DNA of 64,000 bases from Phyllobates terribilis (taxonomy: Eukaryota), in NCBI RefSeq assembly GCF_046119375.1, contig NW_027362763.1:152520001-152584000 (forward strand), written 5' to 3'. The position numbers and the translations under genes were made by a program. The notes below the pieces were generated by a model that was not told where the DNA came from, made no database searches, and saw only the letters and a list, made by a program, of their open reading frames with translations. Positions 1 to 58,051 of this stretch are shown piece by piece. Each line of letters starts with the position of its first letter. Position 1 is the first letter of the stretch.

Positions 1-275
1 ATCAGACCTATTGTATGTAATGATGCATTATTATTATTCTGCCTCCTCTGTGTGATGTCCCTTATCCTCCCCTGCAGTACAGTGATATATGTGTATGGGG
101 GATATCCCCCTATAATATAAGAGTGTCTGTGGAGGGTCCGGCTTGTATCACATCCTCTACATCTGCTGCAGTGTAATCAGTGAGGACATCATATAGAAGT
201 GAGACCTTCCTGCATCTGGGGCTTTTACTCTCCTGCGGTTTCTATGTCTTATTGTCATTTCTTTTTCCTTTTTAG

Positions 276-3200
276 GCCTTGATCGGATCATTAAACCCTT
301 TGAGACTTCCTTGTAAGAACGACTATAAGCTGATCAAACTGATCAGCTTTGGATCTTTTGGGTGAGCTTTATTTTGCTATAATATTTATTTCCCAGGGCT
401 CCTTATGATGATGCCTATGTCTCTGTGACCTGCCCATGTAATGTTCCCATAGACAAATTATATGACTCCACATCACTGTCCACATCTATCACTATTTAGG
501 TCAGGTAGGATGTGACGTGGATGAGGAGATCATTTGAGGAGTGTTGTTTTATGTAATTTTAGACCTGGATTCCTAGTGACGCCCAACATGTTATATCGAC
601 CATTAGTACAGGAGATCACTTGATGAGGTCTATAGACTCATTGTTAGTAAGAATTCATAATAAATCTTGGATTTTCCTCCACTTCAGAGCCGTCCACTTA
701 GTGCGCCATAAAGACACAAATAAAGTATGCGCTATGAAGAAAATGGACAAGCAGAACCTGAAAGACCCAGAGGAACTGGAACGAGCCTTTCTGGAGAGGG
801 ACATCTCAATCTTTGCTGATTGTCCCTTTGTGGCCTCCATGTTCTGCTCCTTTCCTACTAAGCTTCATCTCTGTATGGTTATGGAGTATGTACCAGGTAG
901 GACACATTCATTGTATCTATATCCAGCCCACATCTGCTTAATCCTAGCACCATATATATATTCACCCTCATGATGTACAATTTACATTGTAACAAACCCT
1001 CACCTGTCATATCTGCTTTCTCCTGTAGGAGGAGACTGTGGCAAGCTTTTAAAGTACAGGGGTGCTTTACCTGTCCCCCTTGCCCGTATGTACATTGCGG
1101 AAACAATTCTTGCTGTGGAATATCTGCACAACTATGGTGTGGTGCACAGAGACCTGAAGCCTGAGAAGTAAGTGACCCCTGTAATATAATATAGGGGAAG
1201 AAAATGTAAGTTTATTACATAGTCTATGAGTTATTACTTGGGGCTGACACCATCTTCCTTTCACAGCCTCCTGATAACATCAGCAGGACATATTAAAGTC
1301 ACTGATTTTGGGCTTTCCAAACTCGGCCTCATGAGACCAACATCAGACATCTACCAGGCTCCATTTGAGGACATCACCAGCGAGTTCCTTGATAGTGAGG
1401 TCAGCTTTACTTACAGGATCTTGTACTTCACAAATCTCACCTCTTTCTCCTTTAATTTCTCATCTAGAAAATGTTTTCTATGATGTCATTTGTCGCAATT
1501 ATATTTATTGATCATCATCTCATTGTTCTGTTGGTTTCCAGGCTGTTGGCACCCCTAGATACGTAGCTCCAGAAGTCATCTTAATGAAAGGATATGGAAG
1601 ACCTGTTGACTGGTGGTCAATAGGGATCATCCTATATGAATTTCTTTATGGATTTACACCATTTAATGGAGCTTCCAAAAGGGAGATTTATCACAGTATC
1701 CTCAGGGGTAAGTAAAATCATCTGAATGCTATGTGATCTCACAGTTATTTGGTTTTCTTGATCCTGTGGTTTATTTCCCAACTTTGTTAAGAAAACTGAT
1801 GTTCATGAAAATAAATAAAGAGGTTTTATTTCTTGTAATATTTGTTTTTTATATAACAGATGACATAACTTGGACATATGATAAATACTCTCCTCCCCGC
1901 GATGCTCGGGGCATCATAACGGAGCTGCTCAGAAAAAATCCAACACATAGACTTGGGACAGGTAATATTATAATAGTATTCTTTATGACTTATTACACCT
2001 CTGTGACCAGAAAAATGATCTAGTCCATTAGGATCAGCACTGAGATTCTCTACCTACCTTCAGTACATTTCCGTTACATCTTCAGTTTAGATTAGCATAA
2101 ACTATACAGATATGGAGCAGTTTCTCTGACAATTACTGTATCACTTTCTTTCTTGTCTTCCATTTCCAGAAGGAGCAAATGAGATCAAATTTCATCAATT
2201 TCTGCGTTACTTAGACTTTGACAACCTTCTAAGTCAGAAGCCCCTGTTTGTTCCTGATCTAAAGTCAGATGAGGACACTCGCTACTTTACCAGTAAGTAA
2301 AATGAGACGTAATCTACAGGAAACTGCCGTGTGTCTTGTCATTCATTTTATGTGACAATTAGTCATAACCTGGTGACTGTACGACACTGGTCTTATACTA
2401 ATTATCTCTGATAATAATTGTATTTTGCAGCTCGCTCTAGAACATACAAACATACTGATTCAGATGAGGGCGACACAAGTGGGGACAAAGACTGGACAGA
2501 AGTCCAGAATTTTGTATCATCTTCTGAAAGATTTTCTAAAGTAAGTATGTTACAAATAAAATGTATAAGGCCATGTGCACACAGTGAGTGTTTAATGAGT
2601 TTTTTACCTCAGTATTTTTAAGCCAAAATATTAAGTGGGACAGGGAGAGGAAAAGTATAATAGAAACACGTCACCACTTCTGTATTTTTCACCCACTCCT
2701 GGTTTTGGCTTACATATACTGAGATAAAAAACTCACCAATACTCAATGTGTGCATATGGCCTAAAACCTATAATTAGAAAAAAGTTTAAAAATAAATCAA
2801 TTTTATATTTCTCCGTTCGTTTTAGCTATATCCCACCAATACTGGGATAATGAACAATGAAGAGAAGCCTATGTCATCTTCAGAGTGCTCCCCAGAGAAC
2901 AGCAAAAAAGGCTCAGACATGTGAGTAGATTATTATTATCATTATTATGAGATTCAGTTCTGATATATGTTCAGATCCAAATACAAGACACAAGTAACAT
3001 AAATCTAAATCCAGCATCCACCACCCCATGATTGCAGATCTCAGTGGATCTGGATTGTGATAACACTGCAGTAACAACTGATCAATTTGACCCACTATTC
3101 ATTTCCAGTTCACTACGAACAATATTACTAGTTAGACTCCATTCTTGCTGGTAGAATGGGGTCCTGAGCAGGATGCCCCCTTCATGGTGTCCTAATTGGC

Positions 3201-3971
3201 CTTACAGACAGCTGCTTTTCCATTTTTCTATTGTTTTTCCTTGTAATTGACTTGTCTTTCTTCTTCTAATCAGGCAGAGAGAGATTTCTTCTTCCAAAAC
3301 GGATGATGACAATCAGTGTTTTCCTGCTAAAACCAGCGAGTCATCCTCATCCTCGTCCTCAGTGTCAGGTATGTACAGATTTATAGGAAATCCTATTATA
3401 GCCTATAATGCAAAAGTGTAATGTGCATATTAGTCAGTTTACATAACTCTATATAGACACAAAGCTAATCTTTTAGAAGTTTATAATCAGCATCTGTTTC
3501 TGACTTTTTCATTAGAATCTCCTGTTCAGAAGAGAAGAAATTTTTTTCTAAAGCTGAGAAAACAAGACAAAACTGAGAAAGTAGAAGAGGGGGAACGTAG
3601 GCGAGGTAAGTGTGACAATAAGCTCCATGTTGTATGATGTCAGTGAGAAGGATTCATGTGGAGCAGATGTTATCTGTCAGTGGTGGGATTGTCACATGTA
3701 TGATGACTGACACTGATCCCGTACCTCTGTATGGAGAAGATTCCTCTCCCGTCCTCCCACAGTGACACCACAGTAGTATCCTGTAATATGGACTTCCATT
3801 ACTTACATCAGTTTTACATCTTTTCTCATAGTTTCTCTCTTCTGCCGGATGATATCATCCTGCCGGCGTGGATTGTCCCGGGCTGCTCGCGCTGTCAGAG
3901 AAAGCTACATTTTTGCATGCTGTCAACAGGGCACCATAGACATCTCAAGGACAGAAAACCCCAACATCTAG
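276..3971 (+). CDS. MAST-like AGC Ser/Thr kinase, copy A (5' partial; exons 5-16 of the copy-B model, 495 aa in window)
   Basis: Manually spliced GT-AG exons: 276-361, 688-896, 1029-1167, 1267-1399, 1542-1707, 1860-1961, 2170-2292, 2431-2540, 2826-2920, 3274-3368, 3516-3605, 3832-3971 (TAG). All phases are compatible, with no internal stop. Motifs: [71 protein letters not shown]. These match the MAST kinase domain. No specific MAST1-4 orthology assigned. Confidence 0.9.
2569..2761. mobile_element. 193-bp Tourist/Harbinger-type MITE in the intron after exon 12 of copy A
   Basis: TAA|GGCCATGTGCACAC...GTGTGCATATGGCC|TAA: terminal inverted repeats with a 3-bp TAA duplication. Same internal sequence as 26746-26939. 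Confidence 0.8.
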
Positions 3972-4116
3972 CTCCCTGAAGAACGTGCAGCACATCCTCC
4001 ATCAATGCTGTACCTGTATGGAAGGACTTGTACATCTACCTGTGGCCTTCAAGAAACATCTTCAAAAGCTGAAGGCCTCTCCATGAACATCTCTTCATCC
4101 TTTCCATCAATGCTTA

Positions 4117-4122
4117 ATTAAA
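4117..4122 (+). terminator. Candidate polyadenylation signal ATTAAA of copy A (34817-34822 in copy B)
   Basis: ATTAAA variant ~145 nt after the stop, conserved in both copies. No transcript evidence. Confidence 0.35.
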
Positions 4123-5815
4123 AAATATCTATAAATCAAAATATAAAATTGAATAATGTCCTTTTGAATCTAATTGAATAATAGTGCCATTAGTGGCATA
4201 TCAATATCATACTTGTCATAAATGTCTGATGGGTTGGACACCAAACAGGTGAAGATTGGTTCTATATCTCCCAGTAATCCTCTAAACCCCCGGCCAAGAG
4301 TGGAGGAGATGACCAGAGGTTCTGTTATTCCTAAGGGTGCGTGCACATAGCACTTTATAGACACCAGCATGCCCACTGAGGTTTTTCTATAGGAAGATGT
4401 TTCAGGAAAATGTAGACAGTGTTTTTCCTCAGTAATCTTTATTTGTAATTTTTGCAGTTGGCATCTTTTTTTGTTAACTATGTATAAAGTAGTGAGGGTC
4501 TTCTAAACAGAAGCCACCAGCAGAATGAACAAGTCACTTCCATTATCCACTTCATAAATTTTAAAGCCAAAAGTGGAAAGAAAATGTTGAAAAAGACTCA
4601 AACATACAGTATACACAGCAAATTGTTTTTACATTGAACACATGCGATCATTTAAATTTTTATTGAGTGCTTTTTATGAGGGATCCATGCGGAATCCACC
4701 AGAAGAAGAACTCAGAAGAAGAACTCAGATGCTTTTTCCTTAGTGGATCTCTATTTCAGTTCTATGCACAAGAACAAGCTGGATTCTGTGCTGCAGATTC
4801 TGGGGGTCCCAGCAGTCACACCCCACCAGAGGTGAAGCCAAGGGTTCAGCATAGGGGAGGTGACACATCTGAATGGGTCCTAACTAGGTAACCTTGTTGC
4901 AACTACGGTTGCACACCCTAACTGTGTGTATAGGGGAATCTCAGCAGATGACCGGCTGTTACTGAAAATAAATCTCTACAAAAACCAAAGCAATATTACT
5001 GCCACATGGTGACCATATAGTTGTAGATCACAGGCCTGCGGAATACATTAAAAGATTACACTACAGTTATAGATTGTGTATAGGGAATATAAGTATATAT
5101 AGATTCACTGTTCCCATCTTTTCCATCTGGCCCAGACCGATATGACAGCTTCTTCCAGACATGACTTGTCTACAAAGAACTATTTGACTTCTCAAATTTC
5201 CAGCACCGTCCCCATCTATTAATGACCTGCACAATCTCCTCACCCTGCTGATACCACAATGCTGAGCCGCTGATGCGTATGTGTTACTATACTGCACCTG
5301 CTGTGTGGTATGATAGCAGTGCTCCTGTTACTGCCCCACATACTTATGCCCACCACTGTGCCCCTTACATAGTAATAATGCCTCCTTTGTGCTATCTAGA
5401 TAGTAGAATTACCCTCTAGAAAATATTAATGCTTTGTGTAAGTGTCCAAGAAATAGTTATCACTGAAAGAAGACTTATTAAACTCAGAAATATTAAAATA
5501 TATCACTGAATTAGGTGAACTATTAAGATAAAATATAACTTTTATTTACAATATTAAAATAGTTTTTATTCAATTCCACCGTGCTATGTGAAAGTCTATC
5601 CAGCTATTAATCACCCATAGTGCCATACTGTCTGCTGGATAATAATATATGGCAATGATACCAATACTAGGTCATAGGTGCAGTGTGGATATTATACACG
5701 GCTGGTGATATTACTGCTGGCTGTATATACCACTTATTGTGCCGCTCTGTATATTATTATATCAGTCCCATCCTTATCTATGAGCAGAATATTACAGCTC
5801 ACAATTACACTGTAA

Positions 5816-8800
5816 GGCTATGTGCCCACGATGCAGAAATGCTCCGGATTTTTTTCTGAGCGTTTCTGCATCTCCCCTGGCAGAAAAAACGCATGTGGAT
5901 TGTACATGCGGATTGTACATGCAGATTGTACATGCGGATTGTACATGTGGATTGTACATGCGGATTGTATATGTGGATTGTACATGCGGATTGTACATGC
6001 GGATTGTACATGCGGATTGTATATGCGGATTGTACATGTGGATTGTACATGCGGATTGTACATGCGGATTGTACATGCGGATTGTACATGCGGATTGTAC
6101 ATGCTGATTGTATATGCGGATTGTACATGCGGATTGTACATGCGGATTGTACATGCGGATTGTATATGCGGATTGTACATGTGGATTGTACATGCGGATT
6201 GTACATGCGGATTGTACATGCGGATTGTACATGCAGATTGTACATGCGGATTGTACATGTGGATTGTACATGCGGATTGTATATGCGGATTGTACATGCG
6301 GATTGTACATGCGGATTGTACATGCGGATTGTACATGCGGATTGTATATGCGGATTGTACATGTGGATTGTACATGCGGATTGTACATGTGGATTGTACA
6401 TGCGGATTGTATATGCGGATTGTACATGCAGATTGTACATGTGGATTGTACATGCGGATTGTACATGCGGATTGTATATGCGGATTGTACATGCGGATTG
6501 TACATGTGGATTGTACATGCGGATTGTACATGTGGATTGTACATGCGGATTGTATATGCGGATTGTACATGCAGATTGTACATGTGGAATGTACATGCGG
6601 ATTGTACATGTGGATTGTACATGTGGATTGTACATGCGGATTGTACATGCGGATTGTACATACGGATTGTACATGCAGATTGTACATGTGGATTGTACAT
6701 GCGGATTGTACATGTGGATTGTATATGCGGATTGTACATGCGGATTGTACATGTGGATTGTACATGCGGATTGTACATGCGGATTGTATATGCAGATTGT
6801 ACATGCAGATTGTACATGTGGAATGTACATGCGGATTGTACATGTGGATTGTACATGTGGATTGTACATGCGGATTGTACATGCGGATTGTACATACGGA
6901 TTGTACATGCAGATTGTACATGTGGATTGTACATGCGGATTGTACATGCGGATTGTATATGCGGATTGTACATGCAGATTGTACATGTGGATTGTACATG
7001 CGGATTGTACATGCGGATTGTACATACGGATTGTACATGCAGATTGTACATGTGGATTGTACATGCGGATTGAACATGCGGATTGTATATGCGGATTGTA
7101 CATGTGGATTGTACATGTGGATTGTACATGCGGATTGTACATGTGGATTGTACATGCGGATTGTATATGCGGATTGTACATGCAGATTGTACATGTGGAA
7201 TGTACATGCGGATTTTACATGTGGATTGTACATGTGGATTGTACATGCGGATTGTACATGCGGATTGTACATACGGATTGTACATGCAGATTGTACATGT
7301 GGATTGTACATGCGGATTGTACATGTGGATTGTATATGCGGATTGTACATGCAGATTGTACATGTGGATTGTACATGCGGATTGTACATGCGGATTGTAT
7401 ATGCGGATTGTACCTGCGGATTGTACATGTGGATTGTACATGCAGATTGTACATGCAGATTGTACATGTGGATTGTATATGCGGATTGTACATGCAGATT
7501 GTACATGTGGATTGTACATGCGGATTGTACATGCGGATTGTATATGCGGATTGTACATGCAGATTGTACATGTGGATTGTACATGCGGATTGTACATGCG
7601 GATTGTACATACGGATTGTACATGCAGATTGTACATGTGGATTGTACATGCGGATTGTACATGCGGATTGTATATGCGGATTGTACATGCAGATTGTACA
7701 TGTGGATTGTACATGCGGATTGTACATGTGGATTGTACATGCGGATTGTATATGCGGATTGTACATGCAGATTGTACATGTGGAATGTACATGCGGATTG
7801 TACATGTGGATTGTACATGTGGATTGTACATGCGGATTGTACATGCGGATTGTACATACGGATTGTACATGCAGATTGTACATGTGGATTGTACATGCGG
7901 ATTGTACATGTGGATTGTATATGCGGATTGTACATGCAGATTGTACATGTGGATTGTACATGCGGATTGTACATGCGGATTGTACATGCGGATTGTACAT
8001 GTGGATTGTACATGCAGATTGTACATGCGGATTGTACATGTGGATTGTACATGCGGATTGTACATGCGGATTGTACATACGGATTGTACATGCAGATTGT
8101 ACATGTGGATTGTACATGCGGATTGTACATGTGGATTGTATATGCGGATTGTACATGCAGATTGTACATGTGGATTGTACATGCGGATTGTACATGCGGA
8201 TTGTATATGCGGATTGTACATGCAGATTGTACATGTGGATTGTACATGCGGATTGTACATGCGGATTGTACATACGGATTGTACATGCAGATTGTACATG
8301 TGGATTGTACATGTGGATTGTACATGCGGATTGTACATGCGGATTGTATATGCGGATTGTACATGCAGATTGTACATGTGGATTGTACATGCGGATTGTA
8401 CATGTGGATTGTACATGCGGATTGTATATGCGGATTGTACATGCAGATTGTACATGTGGAATGTACATGCGGATTGTACATGTGGATTGTACATGTGGAT
8501 TGTACATGCGGATTGTACATGCGGATTGTACATACGGATTGTACATGCAGATTGTACATGTGGATTGTACATGCGGATTGTACATGTGGATTGTATATGC
8601 GGATTGTACATGCAGATTGTACATGTGGATTGTACATGCGGATTGTACATGCGGATTGTATATGCGGATTGTACATGCGGATTGTATATGCGGATTGTAC
8701 ATGCGGATTGTACATGTGGATTGTACATGCAGATTGTACATGCAGATTGTACATGTGGATTGTACATGCGGATTGTACATGCGGATTGTACATACGGATT

Positions 8801-10297
8801 GTACATGCAGATTGTACATGTGGATTGTACATGCGGATTGTACATGTGGATTGTATATGCGGATTGTACATGCAGATTGTACATGTGGATTGTACATGCG
8901 GATTGTACATGCGGATTGTATATGCGGATTGTACATGCAGATTGTACATGTGGATTGTACATGCAGATTGTACATGTGGATTGTACATGCGGATTGTACA
9001 TGCGGATTGTACATACGGATTGTACATGCAGATTGTACATGCAGATTGTACATGTGGATTGTACATGCGGATTGTACATGTGGATTGTATATGCGGATTG
9101 TACATGCAGATTGTACATGTGGATTGTACATGCGGATTGTACATGCGGATTGTATATGCGGATTGTACATGCAGATTGTACATGTGGATTGTACATGCGG
9201 ATTGTACATGCGGATTGTACATACGGATTGTACATGCAGATTGTACATGTGGATTGTACATGCGGATTGTACATGCGGATTGTATATGCGGATTGTACAT
9301 GCAGATTGTACATGTGGATTGTACATGCGGATTGTACATGTGGATTGTACATGCGGATTGTATATGCGGATTGTACATGCGGATTGTACATACGGATTGT
9401 ACATGTGGATTGTACATGCAGATTGTACATGTGGATTGTACATGCGGATTGTACATGTGGATTGTACATGTGGATTGTATATGCGGATTGTACATGCAGA
9501 TTGTACATGTGGATTGTACATGCGGATTGTACATGCGGATTGTACATGCGGATTGTACATGTGGATTGTATATGCGGATTGTACATGCAGATTGTACATG
9601 TGGATTGTACATGTGGATTGTACATGTGGATTGTACATGCGGATTGTACATGCGGATTGTACATACGGATTGTACATGCAGATTGTACATGTGGATTGTA
9701 CATGCGGATTGTACATGTGGATTGTATATGCGGATTGTACATGCAGATTGTACATGTGGATTGTACATGCGGATTGTACATGCGGATTGTATATGTGGAT
9801 TGTACATGCGGATTGTACATGTGGATTGTACATGCAGATTGTACATGCAGATTGTACATGTGGATTGTACATGCGGATTGTACATGCGGATTGTACATAC
9901 GGATTGTACATGCAGATTGTACATGTGGATTGTACATGCGGATTGTACATGCGGATTGTACATGCGGGTTGACAAGCGTTTTCCAAGCGATTTTAGCATC
10001 ACTTGGAAAGTGCTTGTCAGCTTGGTCACACTATATAAATCTATGCAAACAGCGTAATCCATGCTTTCCAATGCAAGTCAATGACGGCGAAAACACAGCG
10101 CTTCCGCAAGATAATTAGTAGTGTTGCTTTTTTTTCCGCAATGATTATCCGCAGCGGAAATTTCCGCAGAATGTCCACAGCACATGTGGATTATCATTGG
10201 GGACATGGCAGGCCTTCTACCATGCGTTTTTTAAGCGTTTCTGCGGCATTTTTGCTGCTGTGGAAACGCTTAAAAAGCGCATCGTGGGCACACAGCC
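5816..10297. mobile_element. Harbinger/Tourist-type MITE, unit A, inflated by an internal satellite
   Basis: TIRs GGCTATGTGCCCACGATGC (5816) and GCATCGTGGGCACACAGCC (10279-10297), one mismatch. The paralog at 36516-37389 is 874 bp; lengths reconcile exactly (874-91+4069-58-312=4482). Confidence 0.8.
5896..9964. repeat. 13-bp tandem satellite (consensus CGGATTGTACATG), 313 units
   Basis: 4069 bp = 313 x 13. Variant units TGG/CAG for CGG, TAT for TAC, CATACGG, GGAATGTA. Explains the >1300-aa artefactual ORFs on both strands. Confidence 0.98.
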
Positions 10298-12539
10298 TCT
10301 GTGAGGATTCATGGTGTCAGTGGAAATCTTCCATGGGTGGAGACAAAGTTGCAACTATCAAGTCCAGGTTGTCTGAGGGAGGATGAATATATTGTGTCTA
10401 TTTCTCTCTCTCCCCCTGATCTGCCTGGATATATGAATCCTCCATCCTCTGTACAGCACCAGCATTACTGCATTATAGAAAGGTCTCCCAATAAGATATC
10501 TACTGAAATAAGGAGTCTGCCTGCCTCTGTATAACTCCTCTAACTACTTGCTGGATTACAATATCACAATTATAAACCCAGGCAGAGATAAAGGGCGTCC
10601 TTATATGCCCCAATAAGATTTGTGTCCAGGTTTACCAGGTCTTAATATCCTCTAGTGGTATTTTGCCTTTAAATATAACCCAGTATTAAAGTGCATTGGA
10701 GTATAACGTTCCTCCAGTACAGTAATAGTGCGTATTAGGTCACAATGCGTTTCGTCCACTCTAAGTTTGCAAATAGCGCCCCCGCTCAATGATGGCTGGT
10801 CCTGGTGTCCCCTAGTAGGGCCTATCCAACTCAGACCACCACCAACCAGAACCAGTCAATACTTAAAAACCAATCAACAGAGCATGTCGTTGACCTATTA
10901 TCCTCAAGAAGATTTAAGACATTAACAGTTAATCAAGTCAGGATAAATCCAGTAGATCAGTACTTGTGATGGAGTAATTATAGATACACAGTGTTAAATA
11001 TACATTACTCACAAAAAGTTAGGGATATTTGATTTTCGGGCAAAATTTATGTAAAATGTAAAAAGTTCACGCTACAGTGATATTTTATCATGAAAGTAGG
11101 GCATTTAAGTAGAAGCGTACAGGGGCCCCAAAGGAGAGGGGGCCCGATCAGCTGCTGCAATGTCTGGTTGTCACATAGAGCCAGCGGCAACATCTCCACT
11201 AAGAGGAGAGGAAGAGGCCCGTACCTGATTCATTTCCGGTCACACAGGGACCTGCACTCCGCAAAATATGTCAGAATGGGCCCTTTTCTCTCCTCTTAGT
11301 TGGTGCTGCTGGTTCTATGCTGCAGGAGCTCGAGATTCCTGGACACGCCCCATGGACTCGCCTGGCCTATTAGCATTCAGGCACAGGCAGGAGGAAGCAG
11401 GCCTGGTAAGTATGGCTGCTGTTCTCAGCCAATCCTGTCTCCTGCTTCTTCACTGCCTCTGACTGCAGCTCTGAACAGCCTCCAAGCAGTCAGTACACCT
11501 GATAACTCTCCTTCCTTCTGAGCAGTTCTTATAACTGATCTGCCTGATCAATGTTCTCATGAGCTATTACATTAATCCCCCATGCCCTCCTGAGGGGGCT
11601 TTACTGGACAACTGCTGCACTGGCCCATTCACAAGCAGTAGCTGCAGTGTGAATGCTGCCTGAGTGGCTCAGTTCCCCAATAAATCCCACTTAGTACAGG
11701 GGGTGGTAAGTGGCTGCAGGAGGGAGAGGAGGTTGATGTGATGGCCGATGGTACTATGGGTCAGTTGCTCAGAACTTCTCAGGAGGCTAGTGTCAGATTT
11801 ACTAACTGCATGGATGTATTGAGGAGACAGGACTGGCTGACAGCTGGAGATCTGGCCAGTAGTGCTGATGGAGGACAGAAGACCAACGGGAAGGAGCTGC
11901 CGAAGATGGGAGAATGCACCTGCCAGAGGGACATCATATGTAAGTATGTGTACTGTATGTACCTGTGTAGTGTTTATATGTATCTCTGTGCACTGATGTA
12001 CTGAGATTATCTGTGTATGTACAGTATGTGTGTATTCACACAGATAACCACAGTACAATATACTGTATATATGGTAGTATCTGAGTGTACAGTAGTTATC
12101 TATGTGTATATATATCTGTAGACAGTATGCGTAAAGGTAAATATCACTTTACCCCAGGTTTCCTGGGAGCAGACAAATTACCAGTGCAGCTGCATCGAGG
12201 TGGAGGGTGGCCCACTGACACCAGCAAATATTTCAGCTATGTGTGTATCCTCGGACGTGCATTCCCCTGAAACATATTGCAATGCAGGGGATCCACCCGC
12301 TCCCTGCACTGCAGTCCAATTTGCAGCCAGCTGCTGACCTCGGCATGCCCATGACTGGTGGCAATGACGTCATGCATGATCATGGGGACACCGAAGTCAG
12401 CTGGCGGCTCCGGTTCCTGGTCAGCTTGGTCGCCATAAAAGGAGGGAGGCCCAAACACATTTCTTGCACAGGGGCCCCAAGCTGTCTGTGTCCACAGGGG
12501 CTTCTCACTGTAACATTCACAAAGTATTCAGCAGTTCTG

Positions 12540-14313: not shown

Positions 14314-14940
14314 TGTAGTATAGAATTCATATAATCCATCAAACTCAATCTGACAGGTGCCCCGCCCCTATCTTAGTGTATCAAACTGTCTAACCCCTCC
14401 CCTTTTTGCAGAGCGTGACCCCGCCCCTATGCCCCAATGAAATTGATAGTGTTATATTAGTGTATCAATTAAAATTGATAGGGTGCATTATCAAATCATT
14501 TAATTTTGTTTCATTGATTTGATAATGTTACTATCAATTAATTGCCCGATTATTATTAACATGATGTTGTACTGCACAAAAAATTTGATTTGATAGTGGC
14601 ATATTATGTATGACACTATCAAATTTGGTGTGTTACTATCACGATTAATTGATCCATATTATACGGCGATGTGATTCGCAATATTATATGGCAGTATGAT
14701 TCTCGAATTTTACATTCAAATGAAATTGGTCGGGCATATTATATATATGGCCGAGTTATAGCTACTCCCAAGTATTAAAAGTATGCACTTTATACAGTTT
14801 GTGAAAAAAATTAAAGAAGCTTTATAAGTTTTAATGATTTCATTAAAAAAATAGAATGTATCAGACACATCACATTTCAGCCAAATTACAGTGGGATATA
14901 AGGCTTTACAATAACATGAGGTAGCAAGTGTTCATAATAT
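14314..14940. repeat. Left arm of a long inverted repeat (foldback-like element)
   Basis: Reverse complement of 23577-24205 along the full length; AT-rich with repeated TGATAG/CTATCA motifs. Confidence 0.9.
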
Positions 14941-15588
14941 ATATATATAAAAACTAGTGTTGAGCGAGCATGCTCGACACTGCTCGGTACTCGCCTGAGC
15001 ATCTCACTACTCGGGATGTTCGGCGAGCACCGAGCATTTTCGGGTTACTCGGGCGGGAGCTCGGGTCTCCGCCCTGCATGTTTGGTGCTCTTTACCGAGC
15101 TAATGAACATGCAGGGATTGCCAGCCAGTCACTGTAATGCCGCAGCCATGTTGTTTGTGGGCATTACAGTGATTGGCTGGCCGCACAGCATCACATTGAG
15201 TATTTAAAACCGGGCGCCGCCATCTTGTACACAGTCGCTCCGGATCAGACAGTGTAGGGAGAGTGCTGCTGAGCTAGGGAGAGATTTATACTGCGAAATA
15301 GGTAGAGGAGGGTCTCTAAAGCCTGGAAAATCAAACAAACAGTCCTTCTGAGGACTAATATCTATCCCAGATATCAGGCAGGCAGGCAGGCTGTATAGGA
15401 GATGCAGTGGTTATACCAACAAACACTGCATTACAGTCCTGTGTGCTGCTGCTGCTCAAATTGCTAGACTTAGCCCCAGGTCTCAGGGGCAGGGCCGGCT
15501 CCAGGTTTTTGTGGGCCCTGGGCGAAAGAGTCTCAGTGGGCCCCCTTAATACATACCAGGATTCACGATGCACAGATACCGCAGAGAA

Positions 15589-15673: not shown

Positions 15674-15984
15674 AATGCAAATATTTCACTTCTTACATTA
15701 CATGACCGATATCTATTGTAAATTCCACAATAGCTCAGAAACTGGCGAATCGCTCCACACAGTATACTGGCCCCCATATAACGGTCCATACAGAACACTG
15801 GCCCCCATAAAATGCTCCGTACAGGATACTGGCCCCCATATAACGCTCTATACAGAATACTGGCCCCCATATAACACTCCATACAGAATCCTGGTCCCCA
15901 TATAGTGCTCCATGCAGGCTGCTCCCCCAACATAATGCCCCATGCAGGCTGTTCCCCCCTATAATGCCCCTTGCAGTATGTCAC

Positions 15985-16685
15985 CCCTCCTCTTTATAAT
16001 GCCCCATGCAGAATGTCACCCCTCCTCTTTATAATGCCCCATGCAGGATGTCACCCCCCTCTTTATAATGCCCCATGCAGGATGTCACCCCTCCTCTTTA
16101 TAATGCCCTATGCAGGATGTCCCCCCCCTCTTTATAATGCCCCATGCAGGATGTCACCCCCCTCTTTATAATGCCCCATGCAGGAGGTTACCCCTCTTCT
16201 TTATAATACCCCATTCAGGATGTCACGCCCCCTCTTATAATGCCCCATGCAGGATGTCACCCCTCCTCTTTATAATGCCCCATGCAGGATGTCAGCCCCC
16301 TTCTTTATAATGCCCCATGCAGGATGTCACCCCCCTCTTTATAATGCCCCATGCAGGTTGTCACCCCTCCTCTTTATAATGCCCCATGCAGGTTGTCACT
16401 GTCCCCTCTTTATAATGCCCCATGCAAGATGTCACCCCTCCTCTTTATAATGCCCCACGCAGGATGTCACCCCCCCTCTTTATAATGCCCCATGCAGGAT
16501 GTCTCCCCCTCCACTTTATAATGCCCCATGCAGGATGTCACCCCCCTCTTTATAATGCCCCATGCAGGATGTCACCCCTCCTCTTTATAATGCACCATGC
16601 AGGATGTCACCCCCCCAAATAATGCCCCATGCAGGATGTCACCCCCTCTCTTTATAATGCCCCATGCAGGATGTCACCCCCCATT
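15985..16685. repeat. 33-35-bp minisatellite (TTTATAATGCCCCATGCAGGATGTCACCCCCCTC), ~20 units
   Basis: Direct tandem repeats giving FIMPHAGCHPP/LYNAPCRMSP pseudo-ORFs. Confidence 0.95.
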
Positions 16686-16929: not shown

Positions 16930-19900
16930 GTGTGCAAGGCGCGTGGCAAGGGACGTGGAACTGGACGTTCTGGTGATGGTGCGTGCAGAGAACGGGGCCG
17001 TGGCCAAGGTGAAAATGTGCCACAACCAACAGCCACATCTTCTCGCTCCCAGTTCTTGACCGAATTACTAGGGAAGCACACAACAACACCACTATTGCAA
17101 ACTGATCAGTGTGAACAGGTTATTAATTGGACAGCAGATAATACTTCCAGTCACCTGGGCACCACCACAACCGGTCTGTCTTCCACACGGTCAAGTCTTA
17201 GTAGCCGTGAGTCTCGACCGCATACTCCTCCTCACCCTGATGCTCCTTCCTCCCACACTGCCGAGTGTCGTCAGACAGCAACCGATTCCACAGTTGGACA
17301 CTCTGAAGAGCTGTTCACTGGTCCATTTCCATATTTGGGCCCCTCGCCTGCTCCGCTTGAAGTGGTGGAAGAGGAGAACTCATGTAGTAATGGCCAAATA
17401 TTTGAACAGTCACGGCCACAGGAAGGCGATGCTGGCAATTTGTTGCAAGAGGTGGACGATGACGAGACACAATTGCCACGAAGTTAGGAGGAGGACCGTG
17501 GTGCGGAAGTGGAAGAGGTGGAGGTGGTGGATGATCTAGTAACTGAACCAACGTGGCAGGAGGACACGCAGAGCGAGGCCAGCAGCAAACAGGGGGAGGG
17601 AGGCAGAGTACCCCAACAGGCAGGAAGAAGCAGTGTGTTGGCCTCAGACAGAAGGCGGGCAACCGTTCCCCGTAACACCAACACGAGGGACGTTGCCAGT
17701 ACAACCGGTAGGTCTTCAAGAGTCTCGAATTTTTTTAAAGACTCTGCTGATAACCCCAAAAAGGCCATTGGTACCACCTGCCAGGCCTGCATCAGCAGGG
17801 GTGACAAAACTACCAGCCTGACCACCACCAGCATGATCAGGCACATGAAAACAAAGCACCCGACTTTGTGGGGCGAACCCCAGGGTCCATCACCAGTGTC
17901 AGCGGGTGTCACCACTGCTACTTCCGCTGTTGTGCGTGTAAGAGAACCTCCTGTTGTGCGTGCAAGGCATTCCCCTGTCCATACTGCATGCAAAGATGCC
18001 CCCTCATCTCAGTCTTCACTTGTTATGGCAGTTTCTCAAGAAACAGCATCAACGTCCATGTCCACGTCCCACCGCAGCGTTCAATTGTCCATATCCCAGA
18101 CCTTTGAACGAAAGCGCAAATTCGCAGCCAACGCCCCACAGGCCACAGTCCTAAATTCTCACATTTCACGACTGCTTGCGTTGGAAATGGTGCCTTTTAG
18201 GCTGGTGGAGACGGAATCCTTCCACAACCTTATGGTGGTGGCCGTCCCTCGGTACTTTGTCCCCAGCCGATACTATTTTGCCTGGTGTGCCATCTCCGTA
18301 CTACAAAAGCACGTGTCCCAAAACATCTGCCGCGCCCTCAACAACACAGTAACTGGGAGAGTCCACCTGACAACGGACACGTGGACAAGTGCTTGTGGCC
18401 AGGGACGGTACATCTCCCTGACGGCACACTGGGTAAACATAGTGGAAGCCAGGACCCAGTCGGACCTTGGGACTGAACACATCCTCCACACACCAAGGAT
18501 TGCGGGCCCTATGTCAGTCAGAGTTGTCCCCACAGTGTACAGCTCTTGCGCATCATTCTCCTCCTCCTCCCCATGTTCAGCCTCCATCTCAGATATCACC
18601 ACATCAGTTACAAGCTGGAAGCACTGCAGTACTGCCTCAGCCAAGCGGCAACAAGCTGTGCTGAAACTCATAAGCTTAGGTGGTAAACCTCACACTGCTT
18701 GTGAGTTGTAGACAGCTGTGAAAGAGCAGGCAGATCTGTGGCTGAGACCGCTGAACCTACATCCAGGCATGGTCGTGTGTGACAATGCCCGTAACCTGGT
18801 GGCGGCTCTGAGGTGAGGTGAGATCACACACGTACCATGCCTGGCTCATGTGCTTAACCTCGTGGTTCAGCGGTTTCTTAAATCGTACCCCGAGTTGCCA
18901 GGTCTGCTCGTCAAAGTACACCGCCTGTCAGCTCATTTTCGCAAGTCGGCTACAGCTTCCGCCGCCCTTGCTGTGTTGCAGTAGCGTTTGCAGCTTCCGG
19001 CACACCGACTGGTGTGTGATGTCCCCACAAGTTGGAACTCTACCCTCCACATGTTGCAAAGGATTTGTGAGCAGAAGATAGCAGTTGTGGAGTACCAGCA
19101 TCAAAAAGGCCATCGGTATTCAGATCAGACTCCACACATAAGACCTCTGGAGTGGACCTGGATGTCTGACATATGTTCCATCCTGACAAACTTTGAGGCA
19201 TCCACCAAGATGTTAAGTGGCGATGACGTCATCATTAGCATCAGCATCCCACTTGTCTGTCTTTTGCAACGCTATCTGTAGAGAATTAAAGAGGAGGCAT
19301 TGCAGCCAGAGTATGATGAGATGGATCAAGAAGCCGAAGCGGTCGATTACACACAGCCCAGCCTCATCTCATCCCAACGTGCATTGGGGGACAATGAGGG
19401 AGAGGAGGAGGAGGAGGAGGAGGAAGAACAGGAGCTTGTATCATGCGCTGTAGACGGTAGTACCTGTACAACTGTCATACCGTCGTTTCAGCGTGGGTGG
19501 CCTGAGGATAGGGGGGGGGGGAGGAGGAGGAGAGCATGGTCAGTCGTCATCTTGGTGAGGACATGGAAGTCTTGCCCGTTACCAGTCTGGCACGCTTGGC
19601 TGACTTTATGTTACTCTGCCTTAACCGTGACCGTCGCGTTGTCAAAATGTTGGGTGACAGTCATTACTGGTTGGTGACACTTTTAGACCCCCGCTACTAG
19701 GAGAACTTTAACTCTCTTATTCCTGAGGTTGAGAGGTCTACAAAAATGGGGCCGTAACAGAAGGCCCTTGCTGCAGAACTGTTAAAAAAATTCCCATCTG
19801 AACACGCTAGTGGCAGAGGTCACAGTTTGTTTCCCAACCAAGGCGTACATGCAAGAGAGACGCAACTCCAATACAGCAGAGGCAGGGGAACACTGTCAAC

Positions 19901-22620: not shown

Positions 22621-23319
22621 GGTGGGTGGGTGGTTGGCTGCATATTTGCACTTGCATTGCAAGGAATGGGGGAGGTACAATTGAACACTGCCCTGGGACA
22701 AGGACTTGCACGGGGATAGTTACAAGTCTGCATCTTCTGATGCGGCAAGGATGACTTCTGATGGGCACACTTTTAGGCAGTGACCTGGGAGTCAGAGATG
22801 CTCCCAGGGGTCTTCCCCATGCTGTTTCCATGTCTTTTCAGCACTGTATGCATGTGTCACACAGCACATGGCCAGATAAGGTTGTAAAATGTTAAAATTA
22901 CATTTCCCAGTGAATGCATTTGTCACGGTTGAAACCAATACAAAAGTGCAAAAACACAAGAAAAATGCTACTTGTGAACATAGTTCAAGGTGTGGAATAG
23001 TATTTTTGTTTTTGGTTATTTATTTTACCTTATACACAAGTCTTTACCCTGGAAAGAAAGTTCCTGAACATATTTCACAGGAAAACCGTTTCAGTTTCGT
23101 TTTTGAACGTTTTATTGTGAGCCCGTAAAAGTGGCTTAATACCTCTGACCACGTTGTTGACAGCAGTGACCTGGGGGTCAGAAATGCTCCCTGGGGCAAT
23201 CCCCATGTCATTTTAACACTGTCACTATGGTGTGGGCACTTTTTAGGCTTTCTACAGACTGAAGGGGGTGCCGCCGCAAAAATGCTCGGGTCTCCCATAG
23301 ACTAACATTAGGCTCGTTG

Positions 23320-34671: not shown

Positions 34672-36515
34672 CTCCCTGAAGAACGTGCAGCACATCCTCC
34701 ATCAATGCTGTACCTGTATGGAAGGACTTGTACATCTACCTGTGGCCTTCAAGAAACATCTTCAAAAGCTGAAGGCCTCTCCATGAACATCTCTTCATCC
34801 TTTCCATCAATGCTTAATTAAAAAATATCTATAAATCAAAATATAAAATTGAATAATGTCCTTTTGAATCTAATTGAATAATAGTGCCATTAGTGGCATA
34901 TCAATATCATACTTGTCATAAATGTCTGATAGGTTGGACACCAAACAGGTGAAGATTGGTTCTATATCTCCCAGTAATCCTCTAAACCCCCGGCCAAGAT
35001 TGGAGGAGATGACCAGAGGTTCTGTTATTCCTAAGGGTGCGTGCACATAGCACTTTATAGACACAAGCATGCCCACTGAGTTTTTTCTATAGGAAGATGT
35101 TTCAGGAAAATGTAGACGGTGTTTTTCCTCAGTAATCTTTATTTGTAATTTTTGCAGTTGGCATCTTTTTTTGTTAACTATGTATAAAGTAGTGAGGGTC
35201 TTCTAAACAGAAGCCACCTGCAGAATGAACAAGTCACTTCCATAATCCACTTCATAAATTTTAAAGCCAAAAGTGGAAAGAAAATGTTGAAAAAGACTCA
35301 AACATACAGTATGACAAGCAAATTGTTTTTACATTGAACACATGCGAACATTTAAATTTTTATTGAGTGCTTTTTATGAGGGATCCATGCGGAATCCACC
35401 AGAAGAAGAACTCAGAAGAAGGACTCAGATGCTTTTTCCTTAGTGGATCTCTATTTCAGTTCTATGCACAAGAACAAGCTGGATTCTGTGCTGTAGATTA
35501 TGGGGGTCCCAGCAGTCACACCCCACCAGAGGTGTAGCCAAGGGTTCAGCATAGGGGAGGTGACACATCTGAATGGGTCCTAACTAGGTAACCTTTTTGC
35601 AACTACGGTTGCACACCCTAACTGTGTGTATAGGGGAATCTCAGCAGATGACCGGCTGTTACTGAAAATAAATCTCTACAAAAACCAAAGCAATATTACT
35701 GCCACATGGTGACCATATAGTGGTAGATCACAGGCCTGCGGAATACATTAAAAGATTACACTACAGTTATAGATTGTGTATAGGGTATATAAGTATATAT
35801 AGATTCACTTTTCCCATCTTTTCCATCTGGCCCAGACCGATATGACAGCCTCTTCCAGACATGACTTGTCTACAAAGAACTATTTGACTTCTCAAATTTC
35901 CAGCACCGTCCCCATCTATTAATGACCTGCACAATCTCCTCACCCTGCTGATACCACAATGCTGAGCCGCTGATGCGTATGTGTTACTATACTGCACCTG
36001 CTGTGTGGTATGATAGCAGTGCTCCTGTTACTGCCCCACATACTTATGCCCACCACTGTGCCCCTTACATAGTAATAATGCCTCCTTTGTGCTATCTAGA
36101 TAGTAGAATTACCGTCTAGAAAATATTAATGCTTTGTGTAAGTGTCCAAGAAATAGTTATCACCAAAAGAAGACTTATTAAACTCAGAAATATTAAAATA
36201 TATCACTGAATTAGGTGAACTATTAAGATAAAATATTACTTTTATTTACAATATTAAAATAGTTTTTATTCAATTCCACCGTGCTATGTGAAAGTCTATC
36301 CAGCTATTAATCACCCATAGTGCCATACTGTCTGCTGGATAATAATATATGGCAATGATACCAATACTATGTCATAGGTGCAGTGTGGATATTATACACG
36401 GCTGGTGATATTACTGCTGGCTGTATATACCACTTATTGTGCCGCTCTGTATATTATTATATCAGTCCCATCCTTATCTATGAGCAGAATATTACAGCTC
36501 ACAATTACACTGTAA

Positions 36516-37389
36516 GGCTATGTGCCCACGATGCAGAAATACTCCGGATTTTTTCCTGAGCGTTTCTGCATCTCCCCTGGCAGAAAAAACGCATGCGGAT
36601 TGTACATGTGGATTGTACATGCGGATTGTACATGCGGATTGTACATGTGGATTGTACATGTGGATTGTACATGCGGATTGTACATGCGTTTTTCCTGCCA
36701 GGGACATACGGATGTGAAGCGTTCTTCACATGCATTTCCGCATGCGGGTTGACAAGCGCTTTCCAAGCGATTTTAGCATTACTTGGAAAGTGCTTGTCAA
36801 CTTGGTCACACTATATAAATCTATGCAAACAGCGTAATCCATGCTTTCCAATGCAAGTCAATAGCGGAGAAAACGCAGCACTTCCGCAAAATAATTGGTA
36901 GTGCTGCGTGTTTTTCAGCAATGATAATCAGCGCAGGTCCCCCAGTCCATCGCGAGCTGCCGGCAAGCGAAGACAAGGAGAGCGGGCGCCGTCAGAAGGT
37001 AAATATAACATTTATTTTTTATTTTATTCTGTTTTTCACAGGTTCTATGGTACCCGGGTCCGGAGGAGATTCTCCTCTCCTCTAGACCCGGGTACCATCC
37101 GCACATTAGAACGCATGGAATGCGCATCTACATATACAGTAATGCGTAATCCATGCTTTCCAATGCAAGTCAATGGCGGCGAAAACACAGCGCTTCCACA
37201 AAACAATTGGTAGTGCTGCGTTTTTTTCCGCAATGATAATCCGCAGCGGAAATTTCCGCAGCATGTGCACAGCACAGGCGGATTATCATTGGGGACATGG
37301 CAGGCCTTCTACCATGCGTTTTTTAAGCGTTTCTGCGGCATTTTTGCTGCTGCGGAAACGCTTAAAAAATGCATCGTGGGCACACAGCC
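36516..37389. mobile_element. Same MITE, unit B (874 bp), with 7 units of the 13-mer at 36596-36686
   Basis: Same TIRs and flanks as 5816-10297. Internal hairpin arms 36575-36595 and 36683-36703 bracket the 7 units. Internal direct repeat at 36832/37144. Confidence 0.8.
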
Positions 37390-37793
37390 TCTGTGAGGAT
37401 TCATGGTGTCAGTGTAAATCTTCCATGGGTGGAGACAAAGTTGCAACTATCAAGTCCAGGTTGTCTGTGGGAGGATGAATATATTGTGTCTATTTCTCTC
37501 TCTCCCCCTGATCTGCCTGGATATATGAATAGTGTTGAGCGATACCTTCCGATATCAGGAAATATCGGATCGGATTGGATCTGGCCGATACCCAAAAAGT
37601 ATCGGATATCGCCGATTCCGATACCGGAAACCAATGCAAGTCAATGGGACACAAATATCGGAATGAAAATAAACCCTTTCTTTCCTTGCAGGTTAATTCT
37701 ACATGAAGTAAAACAACTAACAATAATGTAGAATGTATTGGGGGAGGTGGTTGCCCAAATCGATGGGAACAGTGCTCACAGTGAAACATGAAA

Positions 37794-38370: not shown

Positions 38371-38881
38371 AAAATTGGCGTGGGGTTCCCCGTAATTTTA
38401 GTCTCTAGCGGAGGTTAAGCAGACGTCTGGGGCAGATGTTTGAAGCCTGGGAAGGGGGTAATACCCACGGAGCTTCCCAGGCTACTAATATCAGCCCCCA
38501 GCTGAATACCTAGCCTTTTCTAGCTATTAAAATGGGGGACCCCCCCATAAAAATGACGTGGGTCCCCCCTATTTTAATAGCTAGCAAAGGCTAGGCAGAC
38601 AGCTGGGGCTGATATTAATAGCCCAGGAAGGGTGCCATGAATATTGGCTCCCTCCCAGGCTAGAAACACCAGCCGTCAGCCGCCCCAGAAATGGCGCATC
38701 CGTCGGATGCGCCAATTCTGGCACTTAGCCTCGCTCTTCCCACTGCCCTGTAGCGGTGGCAGTGGGTTAATGGGGTTCGGGTTGATGTCATCTTATAATG
38801 CCAGCTGACATCAAGCCCAGGTTAGTAATGGAGAGGCGTCTATAAGACACCCCCATTACTAACCCCATAGTCAAAGTTAAA

Positions 38882-45199: not shown

Positions 45200-45220
45200 G
45201 AACACCTGCCCCGGTATGCC

Positions 45221-57662: not shown

Positions 57663-58051
57663 GGCTATGTGGCCACGTTGCAGAAATGAAGCAGAAAATT
57701 TCTGCTTCATTTCTGCAAGTCCTCTCCCCGGGAAAAAGCATGCGGAATTCCGCACGCAATTATTGCGCGTTTTTCGTGCGTTTATCGCTCGTTTTCCACA
57801 TGCAGAATTGCCTTGCATTTTTTAATGCATTGCACAAGGCAATTCCGCTTGCGGAAACGCAAAATTAACGGACATGCTGCGGATTTTTGAGCGCAGCATA
57901 AACGCTGCGGAAATATCCGCAGCATGTGCATAGGACTTGCGGAATCCCCTTTGGGACCATGGGGAGCGGATTACCTAGCGTTTCACATGCGTTCACGCTG
58001 TGGAAATTCCGCAGCATATACGCATGAAAAACACTACGTGGGCACGCAGCT
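57663..58051. mobile_element. 389-bp Tourist-type MITE, unit B only
   Basis: TTA|GGCTATGTGGCCACGT...ACGTGGGCACGCAGCT|TTA. Empty site GTTCCTGAACATAT at ~23059-23072 in unit A. TIR related to the 5816 element. Confidence 0.8.

What the first reader, a model, noticed from the sequence alone, without database searches (positions are those of the whole stretch)
5875..9964. Satellite birth captured: 7 units versus 313 units in the loop of the same MITE hairpin
Seen: in unit B, seven 13-mers (36596-36686) lie between inverted arms CCCTGGCAGAAAAAACGCATG and CATGCGTTTTTCCTGCCAGGG (20/21 complementary). In unit A the same site holds exactly 313 units (4069 bp), and the 58 bp containing the right arm are deleted between two CATGCG microhomologies. 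The monomer contains TGTACA and CATG palindromes and resembles the MITE's own GCGGAT/CCGCATG motifs. Established: satellites can derive from MITE internal repeats. Inference: a before/after pair at paralogous loci; loss of the closing arm may be linked to runaway expansion (or B contracted).
Basis: partly seen in the sequence, partly recalled or inferred. Interest (0 to 1): 0.7.

Follow-up and report, generated by a model that had tools for sequence, protein, structure and literature searches.

The report
Transposon-borne 13-bp minisatellite, 7 versus 313 copies
Two duplicated 30-kb segments of a frog-like genome carry the same small hairpin-rich transposon, and a 13-base repeat inside it has 7 copies in one segment and 313 in the other; it is a clean example of an already known way in which transposons seed tandem repeats, and it gives no evidence that losing a hairpin arm caused the growth.

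Summary
Copy A has 313 in-register 13-mers (CATGCGGATTGTA, 5892-9960, no indels). Copy B has 7 (36592-36682) between 21-nt arms that are 20/21 complementary. A lacks exactly 58 bp, including the right arm, between CATGCG repeats. A and B are tandem segmental duplicates, 2.85% diverged in the 5.9-kb left flank.

My additions:
- The unit is the 9-nt hairpin loop plus the palindromic CATG at the inner end of the stem. This puts CATGCG direct repeats 13 bp apart, a ready slippage substrate.
- Its first 10 bases are old transposon backbone, shared with a related element elsewhere in the window.
- Array A is a structured minisatellite with a 5- and 10-unit periodicity and roughly 45-52-unit super-blocks. 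One 27-unit block is repeated exactly. Variant types C-F are absent from B.
- The array therefore grew by repeated multi-unit unequal exchange, most likely in A after the duplication.
- The 58-bp loss joins the array in phase to a downstream pseudo-unit (10/13 identical). It looks like a by-product of the same misalignment, not a trigger.

No outgroup copy could be obtained, so the direction of change and the "arm loss releases expansion" idea remain untested (n=1). Repeat-bearing MITEs that seed satellites are already described in frogs (Xmix/Xstir, miDNA4). At 4 kb and one locus, this is a minisatellite and not yet a satellite.

The parts
5815..5835 (+). Left terminal inverted repeat of the MITE, copy A (AGGCTATGTGCCCACGATGCA)
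   Evidence: Pattern match at 5816-5834 with 0 mismatches. Homologous to B 36515-36535, which pairs with 37370-37390 (pair I3).
5875..5895 (+). Left arm of the inner hairpin, copy A (CCCTGGCAGAAAAAACGCATG). Its partner arm is missing in A.
   Evidence: Sequence read; alignment to B.
5892..9960 (+). Array A: 313 in-register 13-bp units (consensus CATGCGGATTGTA), 4069 bp, no indels. Higher-order structure with 5- and 10-unit periods and super-blocks of roughly 45-52 units.
9961..9973 (+). Pseudo-unit CATGCGGGTTGAC (10/13 identical to the unit), joined in phase to the array. This is the deletion junction in A.
10278..10298 (+). Right terminal inverted repeat of the MITE, copy A
   Evidence: Pattern match at 10279-10297 on the minus strand, 1 mismatch.
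36515..36535 (+). Left terminal inverted repeat of the MITE, copy B
   Evidence: pair I3 (21 nt, 95% complementary to 37370-37390).
36575..36595 (+). Left arm of the inner hairpin, copy B
   Evidence: paired in the folds.
36592..36682 (+). Array B: 7 units, of types A and B only (order ABAABBA)
36683..36740 (+). The 58 bp present in B and absent from A. The first 21 nt (36683-36703) are the right hairpin arm CATGCGTTTTTCCTGCCAGGG. The stretch also holds a unit-like motif, CATACGGATGTGA.
   Evidence: Alignment; sequence.
36741..36753 (+). Pseudo-unit CATGCGGGTTGAC in B, the right-hand microhomology partner
36833..37240 (+). B-only rearrangement inside the MITE: two ~98-bp direct copies (36833-36929 and 37144-37240, 88/98 identical) around a 214-bp insert that has its own 23-nt palindrome
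   Evidence: pair I2.
37370..37390 (+). Right terminal inverted repeat of the MITE, copy B
   Evidence: pair I3.
57663..58051 (+). Related MITE, present only in unit B and flanked by TTA/TTA. It shares the terminal repeat and the backbone motif GAAAAA(C)GCATGCGGA(A)TT with the array-bearing MITE.

Best explanation
A non-coding cut-and-paste transposon remnant (a MITE of about 560 bp, with 21-bp terminal inverted repeats and a body made of a chain of small hairpins) inserted before a ~30.7-kb segment was tandemly duplicated.

1. Origin of the unit. One inner hairpin has a stem whose inner end is the palindrome CGCATGCG. Read on one strand, the 9-nt loop CGGATTGTA is therefore flanked by direct CATGCG repeats exactly 13 bp apart. 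Slippage between these repeats made the first extra copies of CATGCGGATTGTA.
2. State at the duplication. When the segment duplicated, the array was probably short and already held CG and TG variants.
3. Growth in A. In copy A the array then grew to 313 units. It did not grow unit by unit. It grew by repeated out-of-register exchange or replication slippage of multi-unit blocks (5, 10 and about 45-52 units). This amplified a handful of point variants, mostly CpG-to-TpG/CpA decay products.
4. The 58-bp loss. The same kind of misalignment, between an array unit and a unit-like sequence 58 bp downstream (CATGCGGGTTGAC, 10/13 identical, 7 bp exact), removed the right hairpin arm in A. The deletion is a by-product of array dynamics, not its cause.

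Shown: the anatomy, the paralogy, the block structure, the in-phase junction and the backbone origin of the unit. Inferred: the direction of change (A grew), the slippage origin and the order of events. No function is implied; this is neutral repeat turnover.
For: Array and junction:
- 313 in-register units with no indels.
- 7 units in B between arms that pair in the DNA fold.
- A/B alignment with the 58-bp gap and an in-phase pseudo-unit.

Duplication:
- Colinear A/B blocks at 93-97% identity.
- The left flank is 2.85% diverged. 12 of 80 CpG sites show CG versus TG/CA.

Block growth:
- Unit types number A 117, B 84, C 50, D 35, E 15 and F 5.
- Unit-type identity is 0.41 at lag 5 and 0.37 at lag 10, against 0.25 in shuffles (maximum 0.31-0.32).
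- The longest repeated run is 27 units, against at most 11 in 200 shuffles. It is an exact 358-bp block at a lag of 52 units.
- The doubly mutated F unit occurs 5 times, each time preceded by a C unit and four times followed by the same ABBAAECB run.
- 45% of units have lost the CpG, far more than the flank decay rate allows for independent hits. The variants were therefore amplified, not independently mutated.

Direction:
- Types C-F are absent from B, and no 7-unit window of A has only types A and B.

Origin of the unit:
- The related MITE at 57663-58051 shares GAAAAA(C)GCATGCGGA(A)TT.

Context and precedent:
- Other tandem arrays shared by A and B differ by at most about 2-fold.
- The array strand folds into imperfect hairpins somewhat better than shuffles (z = -2.7 to -3.0).
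- The published model of microhomology-flanked repeats inside frog MITEs covers this case (PMC12628747, PMC9659126).
Against: - No outgroup copy of the element was obtainable. The ancestral array length is therefore not known, and a long ancestral array that contracted in B is not excluded.
- Array A may have been turned over after the split, which would erase evidence of an old long array.
- The order of the 58-bp deletion and the expansion cannot be read from one sequence.
- The array length rests on the assembly alone.
- The target-site duplication of the array-bearing MITE is not recognisable (TAA on the left, TCT on the right), so its transposon superfamily is unresolved.
Confidence: 0.6

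Rival explanations
1. Hairpin clamp. The two arms normally fold the repeat into a loop, which biases replication towards deletion or keeps the array short. Deleting the right arm in A removed this brake and allowed runaway expansion.
For: - The only long array lacks the arm, and the only short one has it.
- The arms pair in predicted DNA folds.
- Established knowledge: inverted repeats promote deletion of the intervening DNA between flanking direct repeats during replication.
Against: - There is one long and one short array, so no correlation can be tested.
- The stem is only 21 bp with a mismatch, around a loop of at least 87 nt, so it is a weak structure in duplex DNA.
- The deletion junction is exactly what a unit-versus-pseudo-unit misalignment produces, so it is expected as a consequence of array instability.
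- A 12-nt complement of the left arm still exists further right in the element (pair I21).
Confidence: 0.1
2. B contracted. The array was already long when the segment duplicated. B lost almost all of it in one or a few deletions while keeping the arm, and A lost the arm independently.
For: - Minisatellites contract as readily as they expand.
- The TG variant is present in both arrays, so the ancestral array had at least two unit types or more than one unit.
- No outgroup is available.
Against: - B's seven units contain none of types C, D, E or F, which make up about a third of A and pervade it. No 7-unit window of A, and no join of A's two edges, reproduces a pure A/B-type array.
- Exactly repeated blocks of up to 358 bp show that much of A's length is younger than the 2.85% A/B divergence.
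Confidence: 0.15
3. Assembly effect. Either the array length in A is wrong, or A and B are two haplotypes of one locus wrongly placed in tandem. In the second case, 7 versus 313 would be an allelic length polymorphism.
For: - Tandem arrays and recent duplications are classic sources of assembly error.
- No reads are available here.
Against: - There are no N runs anywhere in the window.
- Both flanks of array A are colinear with B's flanks.
- The array has a complex, non-periodic large-scale variant pattern and no indels, unlike a collapsed or stuttered consensus.
- 2.85% substitutions plus a 5-kb block, a retrotransposon and a MITE insertion present in B only would be an unusually large difference between two alleles of one locus.
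Confidence: 0.08
4. Ectopic acquisition. Long arrays of the same 13-mer exist elsewhere in the genome, and A received its array by gene conversion or recombination with such a copy. The 58-bp loss came in with the donor tract.
For: - MITE families are dispersed and provide homology for ectopic exchange.
- The leftmost ~50 units of A differ in composition from the rest (A-rich, no E or F). This could mark a conversion boundary.
Against: No other array of the unit was seen in the window or in any collection searched. Those collections do not hold this genome, so this is weak evidence.
Confidence: 0.07

Closest known systems
miDNA4 of Xenopus tropicalis (Scalvenzi and Pollet 2014; as summarised in PMC12628747, PMC9659126 and PMC12054243)
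   Same: - A frog MITE with the layout [inverted repeat - (tandem repeat)n - inverted repeat].
- Most copies have one monomer and some have arrays.
- The monomer is flanked by short direct repeats (microhomologies), which are proposed to drive internal deletions and expansions.
- Long arrays are proposed to lose the inverted repeats.
   Different: - miDNA4 is Tc1/mariner-type and AT-rich, and its monomer is proposed to have been captured.
- Here the terminal repeats are different (AGGCTATGTGCCCACG...).
- The 13-bp unit is the element's own hairpin loop plus stem end.
- The comparison is between two copies made by segmental duplication, not by transposition.
- The terminal repeats are retained; only an inner arm is lost.
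Xmix MITE / Xstir tandem repeats of Xenopus (Hikosaka and Kawahara 2004; via PMC12628747 and PMC6004289)
   Same: - An internal segment of a frog MITE amplified into tandem arrays.
- MITE, composite and pure-array forms coexist.
- A stem-loop is invoked in the mechanism.
   Different: - Xstir is a large dispersed repeat family, generated in the proposed model from two neighbouring elements.
- Xmix is a T2/Kolobok MITE with a TTAA target and an AGGRR end.
- Here only one 4-kb array is known, and the TTAA target is not seen at the array-bearing copy.
DTC84 / pearl-type repeat-bearing MITEs of bivalves (PMC3879986)
   Same: - A short internal array of variable copy number.
- A palindrome near the unit junction is proposed as the hotspot for length change.
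- Ordered repeat variants.
   Different: The units are much longer with at most 5 copies, the host is a mollusc, and no expansion to hundreds of units at one locus is reported.
Vertebrate minisatellites (VNTRs) with interspersed variant repeats
   Same: - Unit of 10-60 bp and an array of 0.5-30 kb.
- Variant units interspersed in blocks.
- Growth by unequal exchange or gene conversion.
   Different: Population length polymorphism was not tested, and the seed here is identifiable as a transposon hairpin.

Membership tests
Tandem-repeat-bearing MITE (miDNA4 / Xmix type) | Terminal inverted repeats | tested here: met
   21-nt arms, 95% complementary, at 36515-36535 and 37370-37390 (pair I3). The same ends are present in A.
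Tandem-repeat-bearing MITE (miDNA4 / Xmix type) | Small size and no coding capacity | tested here: met
   About 560 bp without the array and the B-only insert. Only spurious ORFs run through the repeat, and they have no protein relatives.
Tandem-repeat-bearing MITE (miDNA4 / Xmix type) | Target-site duplication | tested here: inconclusive
   The array-bearing copy has TAA on the left and TCT on the right, so no clear duplication. The related element at 57663-58051 has TTA/TTA, with an empty site in A.
Tandem-repeat-bearing MITE (miDNA4 / Xmix type) | Many dispersed copies in the genome | not testable with these tools
   Only one related element lies in the window. The genome itself is not searchable here, and the public collections gave nothing.
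Tandem-repeat-bearing MITE (miDNA4 / Xmix type) | Internal tandem repeat whose copy number varies between copies | tested here: met
   7 versus 313 units at the same internal site. The two copies arose by segmental duplication, not by transposition.
Satellite DNA | Long arrays (tens of kb or more), usually at several loci or in heterochromatin | tested here: not met
   A single 4.07-kb array in the window. Other loci could not be surveyed.
Minisatellite (VNTR) | Unit of 10-60 bp, array of 0.5-30 kb, interspersed variant units | tested here: met
   13-bp unit, 4069 bp, six recurrent variant types in a block pattern.
Minisatellite (VNTR) | Length polymorphism between individuals | not testable with these tools
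   There is only one assembly.
T2 / Kolobok MITEs of frogs | TTAA target site and AGGRR terminal motif (PMC6004289) | tested here: inconclusive
   The ends read AGGCT (AGG, but then not RR). The flanks are not TTAA at the array-bearing copy. The related copy fits a TTA duplication, or TTAA with one base missing.

The most novel reading that the evidence does not exclude
An inner hairpin arm of a MITE acts as a length brake on a repeat born in its loop. Deleting the arm, itself caused by a misalignment of the repeat, is the switch that turns a stable short repeat into an expanding array. This would be a general, sequence-readable step in how transposons become satellites.
Probability: 0.08. Interest if true: 0.6.

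Novelty: new member of a known kind. Interest (0 to 1): 0.3.

Why it matters
Transposon-to-satellite transitions are mostly inferred from family-wide surveys. Here two copies that share the same insertion event, the same flanks and a datable split (about 2.9% divergence) differ 45-fold in repeat number. The seed of the repeat can be read directly: a hairpin loop plus a palindromic stem end, which creates direct repeats 13 bp apart. That makes it a tidy teaching example and a usable locus for measuring minisatellite growth rates in a large amphibian genome. It does not change what is known. Repeat-bearing MITEs that expand through flanking microhomologies are already described in frogs, and the one new idea, that arm loss releases expansion, has no support beyond a single coincidence.

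Tried and rejected
- Looking for other copies or arrays to serve as an outgroup.
  - Word-based protein search with a 300-aa ORF read through the array: one unrelated repeat protein.
  - The same search with the 102-aa ORF covering B's array, right arm and downstream hairpin: nothing.
  - Exact scans for a unit dimer in metagenome, viral and prokaryotic genome collections: 0 hits each.
  - Scan for the terminal repeat in metagenomes: 10 hits, all 19-21-nt chance matches in 61-70% G+C bacterial contigs.
  - None of these collections holds this genome, so the blanks say nothing about other arrays in it.
- The scan's own notes, searched by sequence, by relatives and by words, gave no other locus with this unit.
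- A sensitive search of the window for further copies of the element found only the related MITE at 57663-58051.
- I tried to match B's seven units to a sub-segment or an edge-join of A's array. No match was found.
- I tried to assign the transposon superfamily from the ends and target duplication. PIF/Harbinger-like (TTA) and T2/Kolobok-like (TTAA, AGG end) could not be separated.
- I did not use the third word search or the large profile search, because neither could have reached this genome.
Full report
**1. The observation**

Tandem Repeats Finder reports one array at 5892-9978 with no indels, and a 7.5-copy array of the same 13-mer at 36592-36688.

- Array A. Cut in register from 5892, it is 313 units, all within one or two mismatches of CATGCGGATTGTA, followed by CATGCGGGTTGAC.
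- Chance. The unit matches 303 times at up to 1 mismatch, against 0.09 expected.
- Array B. Seven units lie between CCCTGGCAGAAAAAACGCATG (36575-36595) and CATGCGTTTTTCCTGCCAGGG (36683-36703). The arms are 20/21 complementary by direct reading. They pair in the minimum-energy DNA fold of the whole element and of the local 141 nt (-32.7 kcal/mol, z = -5.8).
- Deletion. In the A/B alignment, A lacks exactly B 36683-36740 (58 bp). CATGCG lies at both edges.

**2. Context**

- The window holds two tandem copies of a segment of about 30.7 kb. Positions 1-5988 align to 30714-36688 at 96.3%, and colinear blocks at 93-97% run to the window's end.
- In the 5.9-kb left flank the copies differ by 2.85% substitutions (85 transitions, 82 transversions). 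12 of 80 CpG sites read CG against TG/CA.
- There are no N runs in the window.
- B also carries a 5-kb block of nested repeats (37531-42553) and a Ty3/gypsy-type pol region (45.2-48.6 kb), both absent from A.
- Earlier notes of this scan call the genome the golden poison frog. I did not verify this.

**3. The element**

- It has 21-nt terminal inverted repeats, 95% complementary (36515-36535 and 37370-37390, pair I3). The same ends are present in A.
- Its body is a chain of local hairpins. The whole-element DNA fold has z = -20.
- It has no coding capacity. ORFs through the repeat have no relatives.
- A clear target duplication is lacking at this copy.
- A related element (68-70% identical at the ends) sits at 57663-58051 in B only. 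It is flanked by TTA/TTA, and A has the empty site. The wider family therefore moved after the duplication, or was excised from A.
- The ends (AGGCT...) and the TTA or TTAA-like target fit either PIF/Harbinger-like elements or the T2/Kolobok MITEs of frogs (TTAA, AGGRR; PMC6004289). I leave the superfamily open.
- B's copy is not pristine. It has two ~98-bp direct copies around a 214-bp insert.

**4. Where the unit comes from**

- With a single unit the site reads ...AAAAAACGCATG-CGGATTGTA-CATGCGTTTTT.... This is a stem whose inner end is the palindrome CGCATGCG, around a 9-nt loop.
- Because the inner stem end is a palindrome, the top strand carries CATGCG twice, 13 bp apart. This read follows directly from the sequence. 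It is the kind of short direct repeat that the miDNA4 model invokes for internal expansions and deletions (PMC12628747).
- The related element shares GAAAAA(C)GCATGCGGA(A)TT at the same place. The first ten bases of the unit are therefore old backbone, not captured DNA.
- Unit-like motifs recur nearby: CATACGGATGTGA inside the 58 bp, and CATGCGGGTTGAC just after it.

**5. How array A is built**

- Six unit types recur:
  - A, CATGCGG..., 117 units
  - B, CATGTGG..., 84 units
  - C, CATGCAG..., 50 units
  - D, TATGCGG..., 35 units
  - E, CATACGG..., 15 units
  - F, CATGTGGAATGTA, 5 units
- Types B and C are the two products of CpG decay. Together with types F and G and one singleton they make 45% of units lacking the CpG, far above what the flank's decay rate allows for independent hits. 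The variants were therefore copied, not re-mutated.
- Unit-type identity peaks at lags 5 and 10 (0.41 and 0.37, against 0.25 in shuffles, maximum 0.31-0.32). It peaks again at lags 52, 62 and 117.
- The longest repeated run is 27 units, against at most 11 in 200 shuffles. It is an exact 358-bp block at a lag of 52 units.
- The doubly mutated F unit occurs five times (units 54, 72, 101, 146, 198), each time preceded by a C unit and four times followed by the same ABBAAECB run.
- The leftmost ~50 units are A-rich and lack E and F.
- Together these are the signature of repeated out-of-register exchange of multi-unit blocks, as in minisatellites and higher-order satellites.
- The array strand also folds into imperfect hairpins slightly better than shuffles (z about -3). 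This would favour slipped structures.

**6. Direction of change**

- The 58 bp are ancestral. B's right arm is complementary to a left arm that both copies keep.
- For array length there is no outgroup.
- Internal evidence favours growth in A:
  - B is ABAABBA, with types A and B only.
  - No 7-unit window of A, and no join of A's edges, is free of types C-F.
  - Exact blocks of up to 358 bp are younger than the 2.85% split.
- Contraction in B from a long array that was later turned over in A is not excluded.
- Other arrays shared by A and B differ by at most about two-fold: the 35-mer has 21.8 versus 21.9 copies and the AT repeat 40.5 versus 25.5. The 45-fold difference is therefore specific to this repeat.

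**7. The deletion and the "clamp"**

- In A the array runs in phase into CATGCGGGTTGAC. This matches the unit at 10 of 13 positions, with 7 exact.
- An unequal exchange or slippage between any array unit and this pseudo-unit gives exactly this junction and removes the arm.
- The deletion is thus most simply a by-product of the process that changes array length. By itself it cannot lengthen the array.
- The idea that arm loss released the expansion is physically conceivable, because inverted repeats favour deletion of what lies between them. But it rests on one long and one short array, and the stem is a weak 21-bp one around a loop of at least 87 nt.

**8. What is known**

- Repeat-bearing MITEs that seed arrays are described in frogs: Xmix/Xstir and miDNA4 (PMC9659126, PMC12628747, PMC12054243, PMC6004289).
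- They are also described in bivalves and in Drosophila (PMC3879986, PMC4079207).
- The published miDNA4 model includes flanking microhomologies and the later loss of inverted repeats.
- This scan has itself noted MITE-derived arrays elsewhere in this genome.
- The present locus is a new instance, with an unusually clean paired comparison and a readable seed. At 4 kb and one locus it is a minisatellite rather than a satellite.

**9. Verdict**

- Best reading, about 0.6: post-duplication block-wise expansion in A of a hairpin-loop-derived 13-mer, with the arm loss as a by-product.
- Rivals: B contracted (0.15), hairpin clamp (0.10), assembly or haplotype artefact (0.08), ectopic acquisition (0.07).
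- Novelty: new member of a known kind. Interest: 0.3.

Noticed in passing
window 57660-58054 versus 23062-23072: A ~390-bp MITE related to the array-bearing one is present only in unit B, flanked by TTA/TTA. Unit A has the unoccupied site (reading TGA). This is evidence that the MITE group was mobile after the segmental duplication, or that the element was excised from A.
   Followed up: partly
window 36833-37240: Inside B's copy of the MITE, two ~98-bp direct copies (88/98 identical) flank a 214-bp insert absent from A. The insert holds a 23-nt near-perfect palindrome (37047-37098). Its origin is unknown: either an insertion with a long flanking duplication, or a deletion in A between direct repeats.
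   Followed up: partly
window 45174-49680: A B-only block with ORFs for reverse transcriptase, RNase H and integrase (Ty3/gypsy-type pol). No long terminal repeats were detected within 45000-49800.
   Followed up: partly
window 37531-42553: A B-only 5-kb block starting 140 bp after the MITE. It is made of nested repeats: a 200-bp tandem (2.6 copies), palindromes with arms of 321 and 191 nt, and ~2.1-2.3-kb-spaced direct repeats.
   Followed up: no
window 15932-16680 and 50301-51046: A 35-bp minisatellite with practically the same copy number in both units (21.8 versus 21.9) despite only ~88% unit identity. This contrasts with the 45-fold change of the 13-mer.
   Followed up: no
window 17509-18711 and 24548-25249: ORFs with weak BED zinc-finger matches, probably hAT-type transposase remnants. 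They lie near the ~627-bp inverted arms at 14315-14941 and 23577-24204, which another note of the scan calls a foldback-like element.
   Followed up: no
window 1-5891 versus 30714-36591: Substitutions between the two duplicated units show a transition:transversion ratio of about 1 (85:82), unusually low for vertebrate neutral DNA. CpG sites are only ~6-fold more changed than other sites.
   Followed up: no
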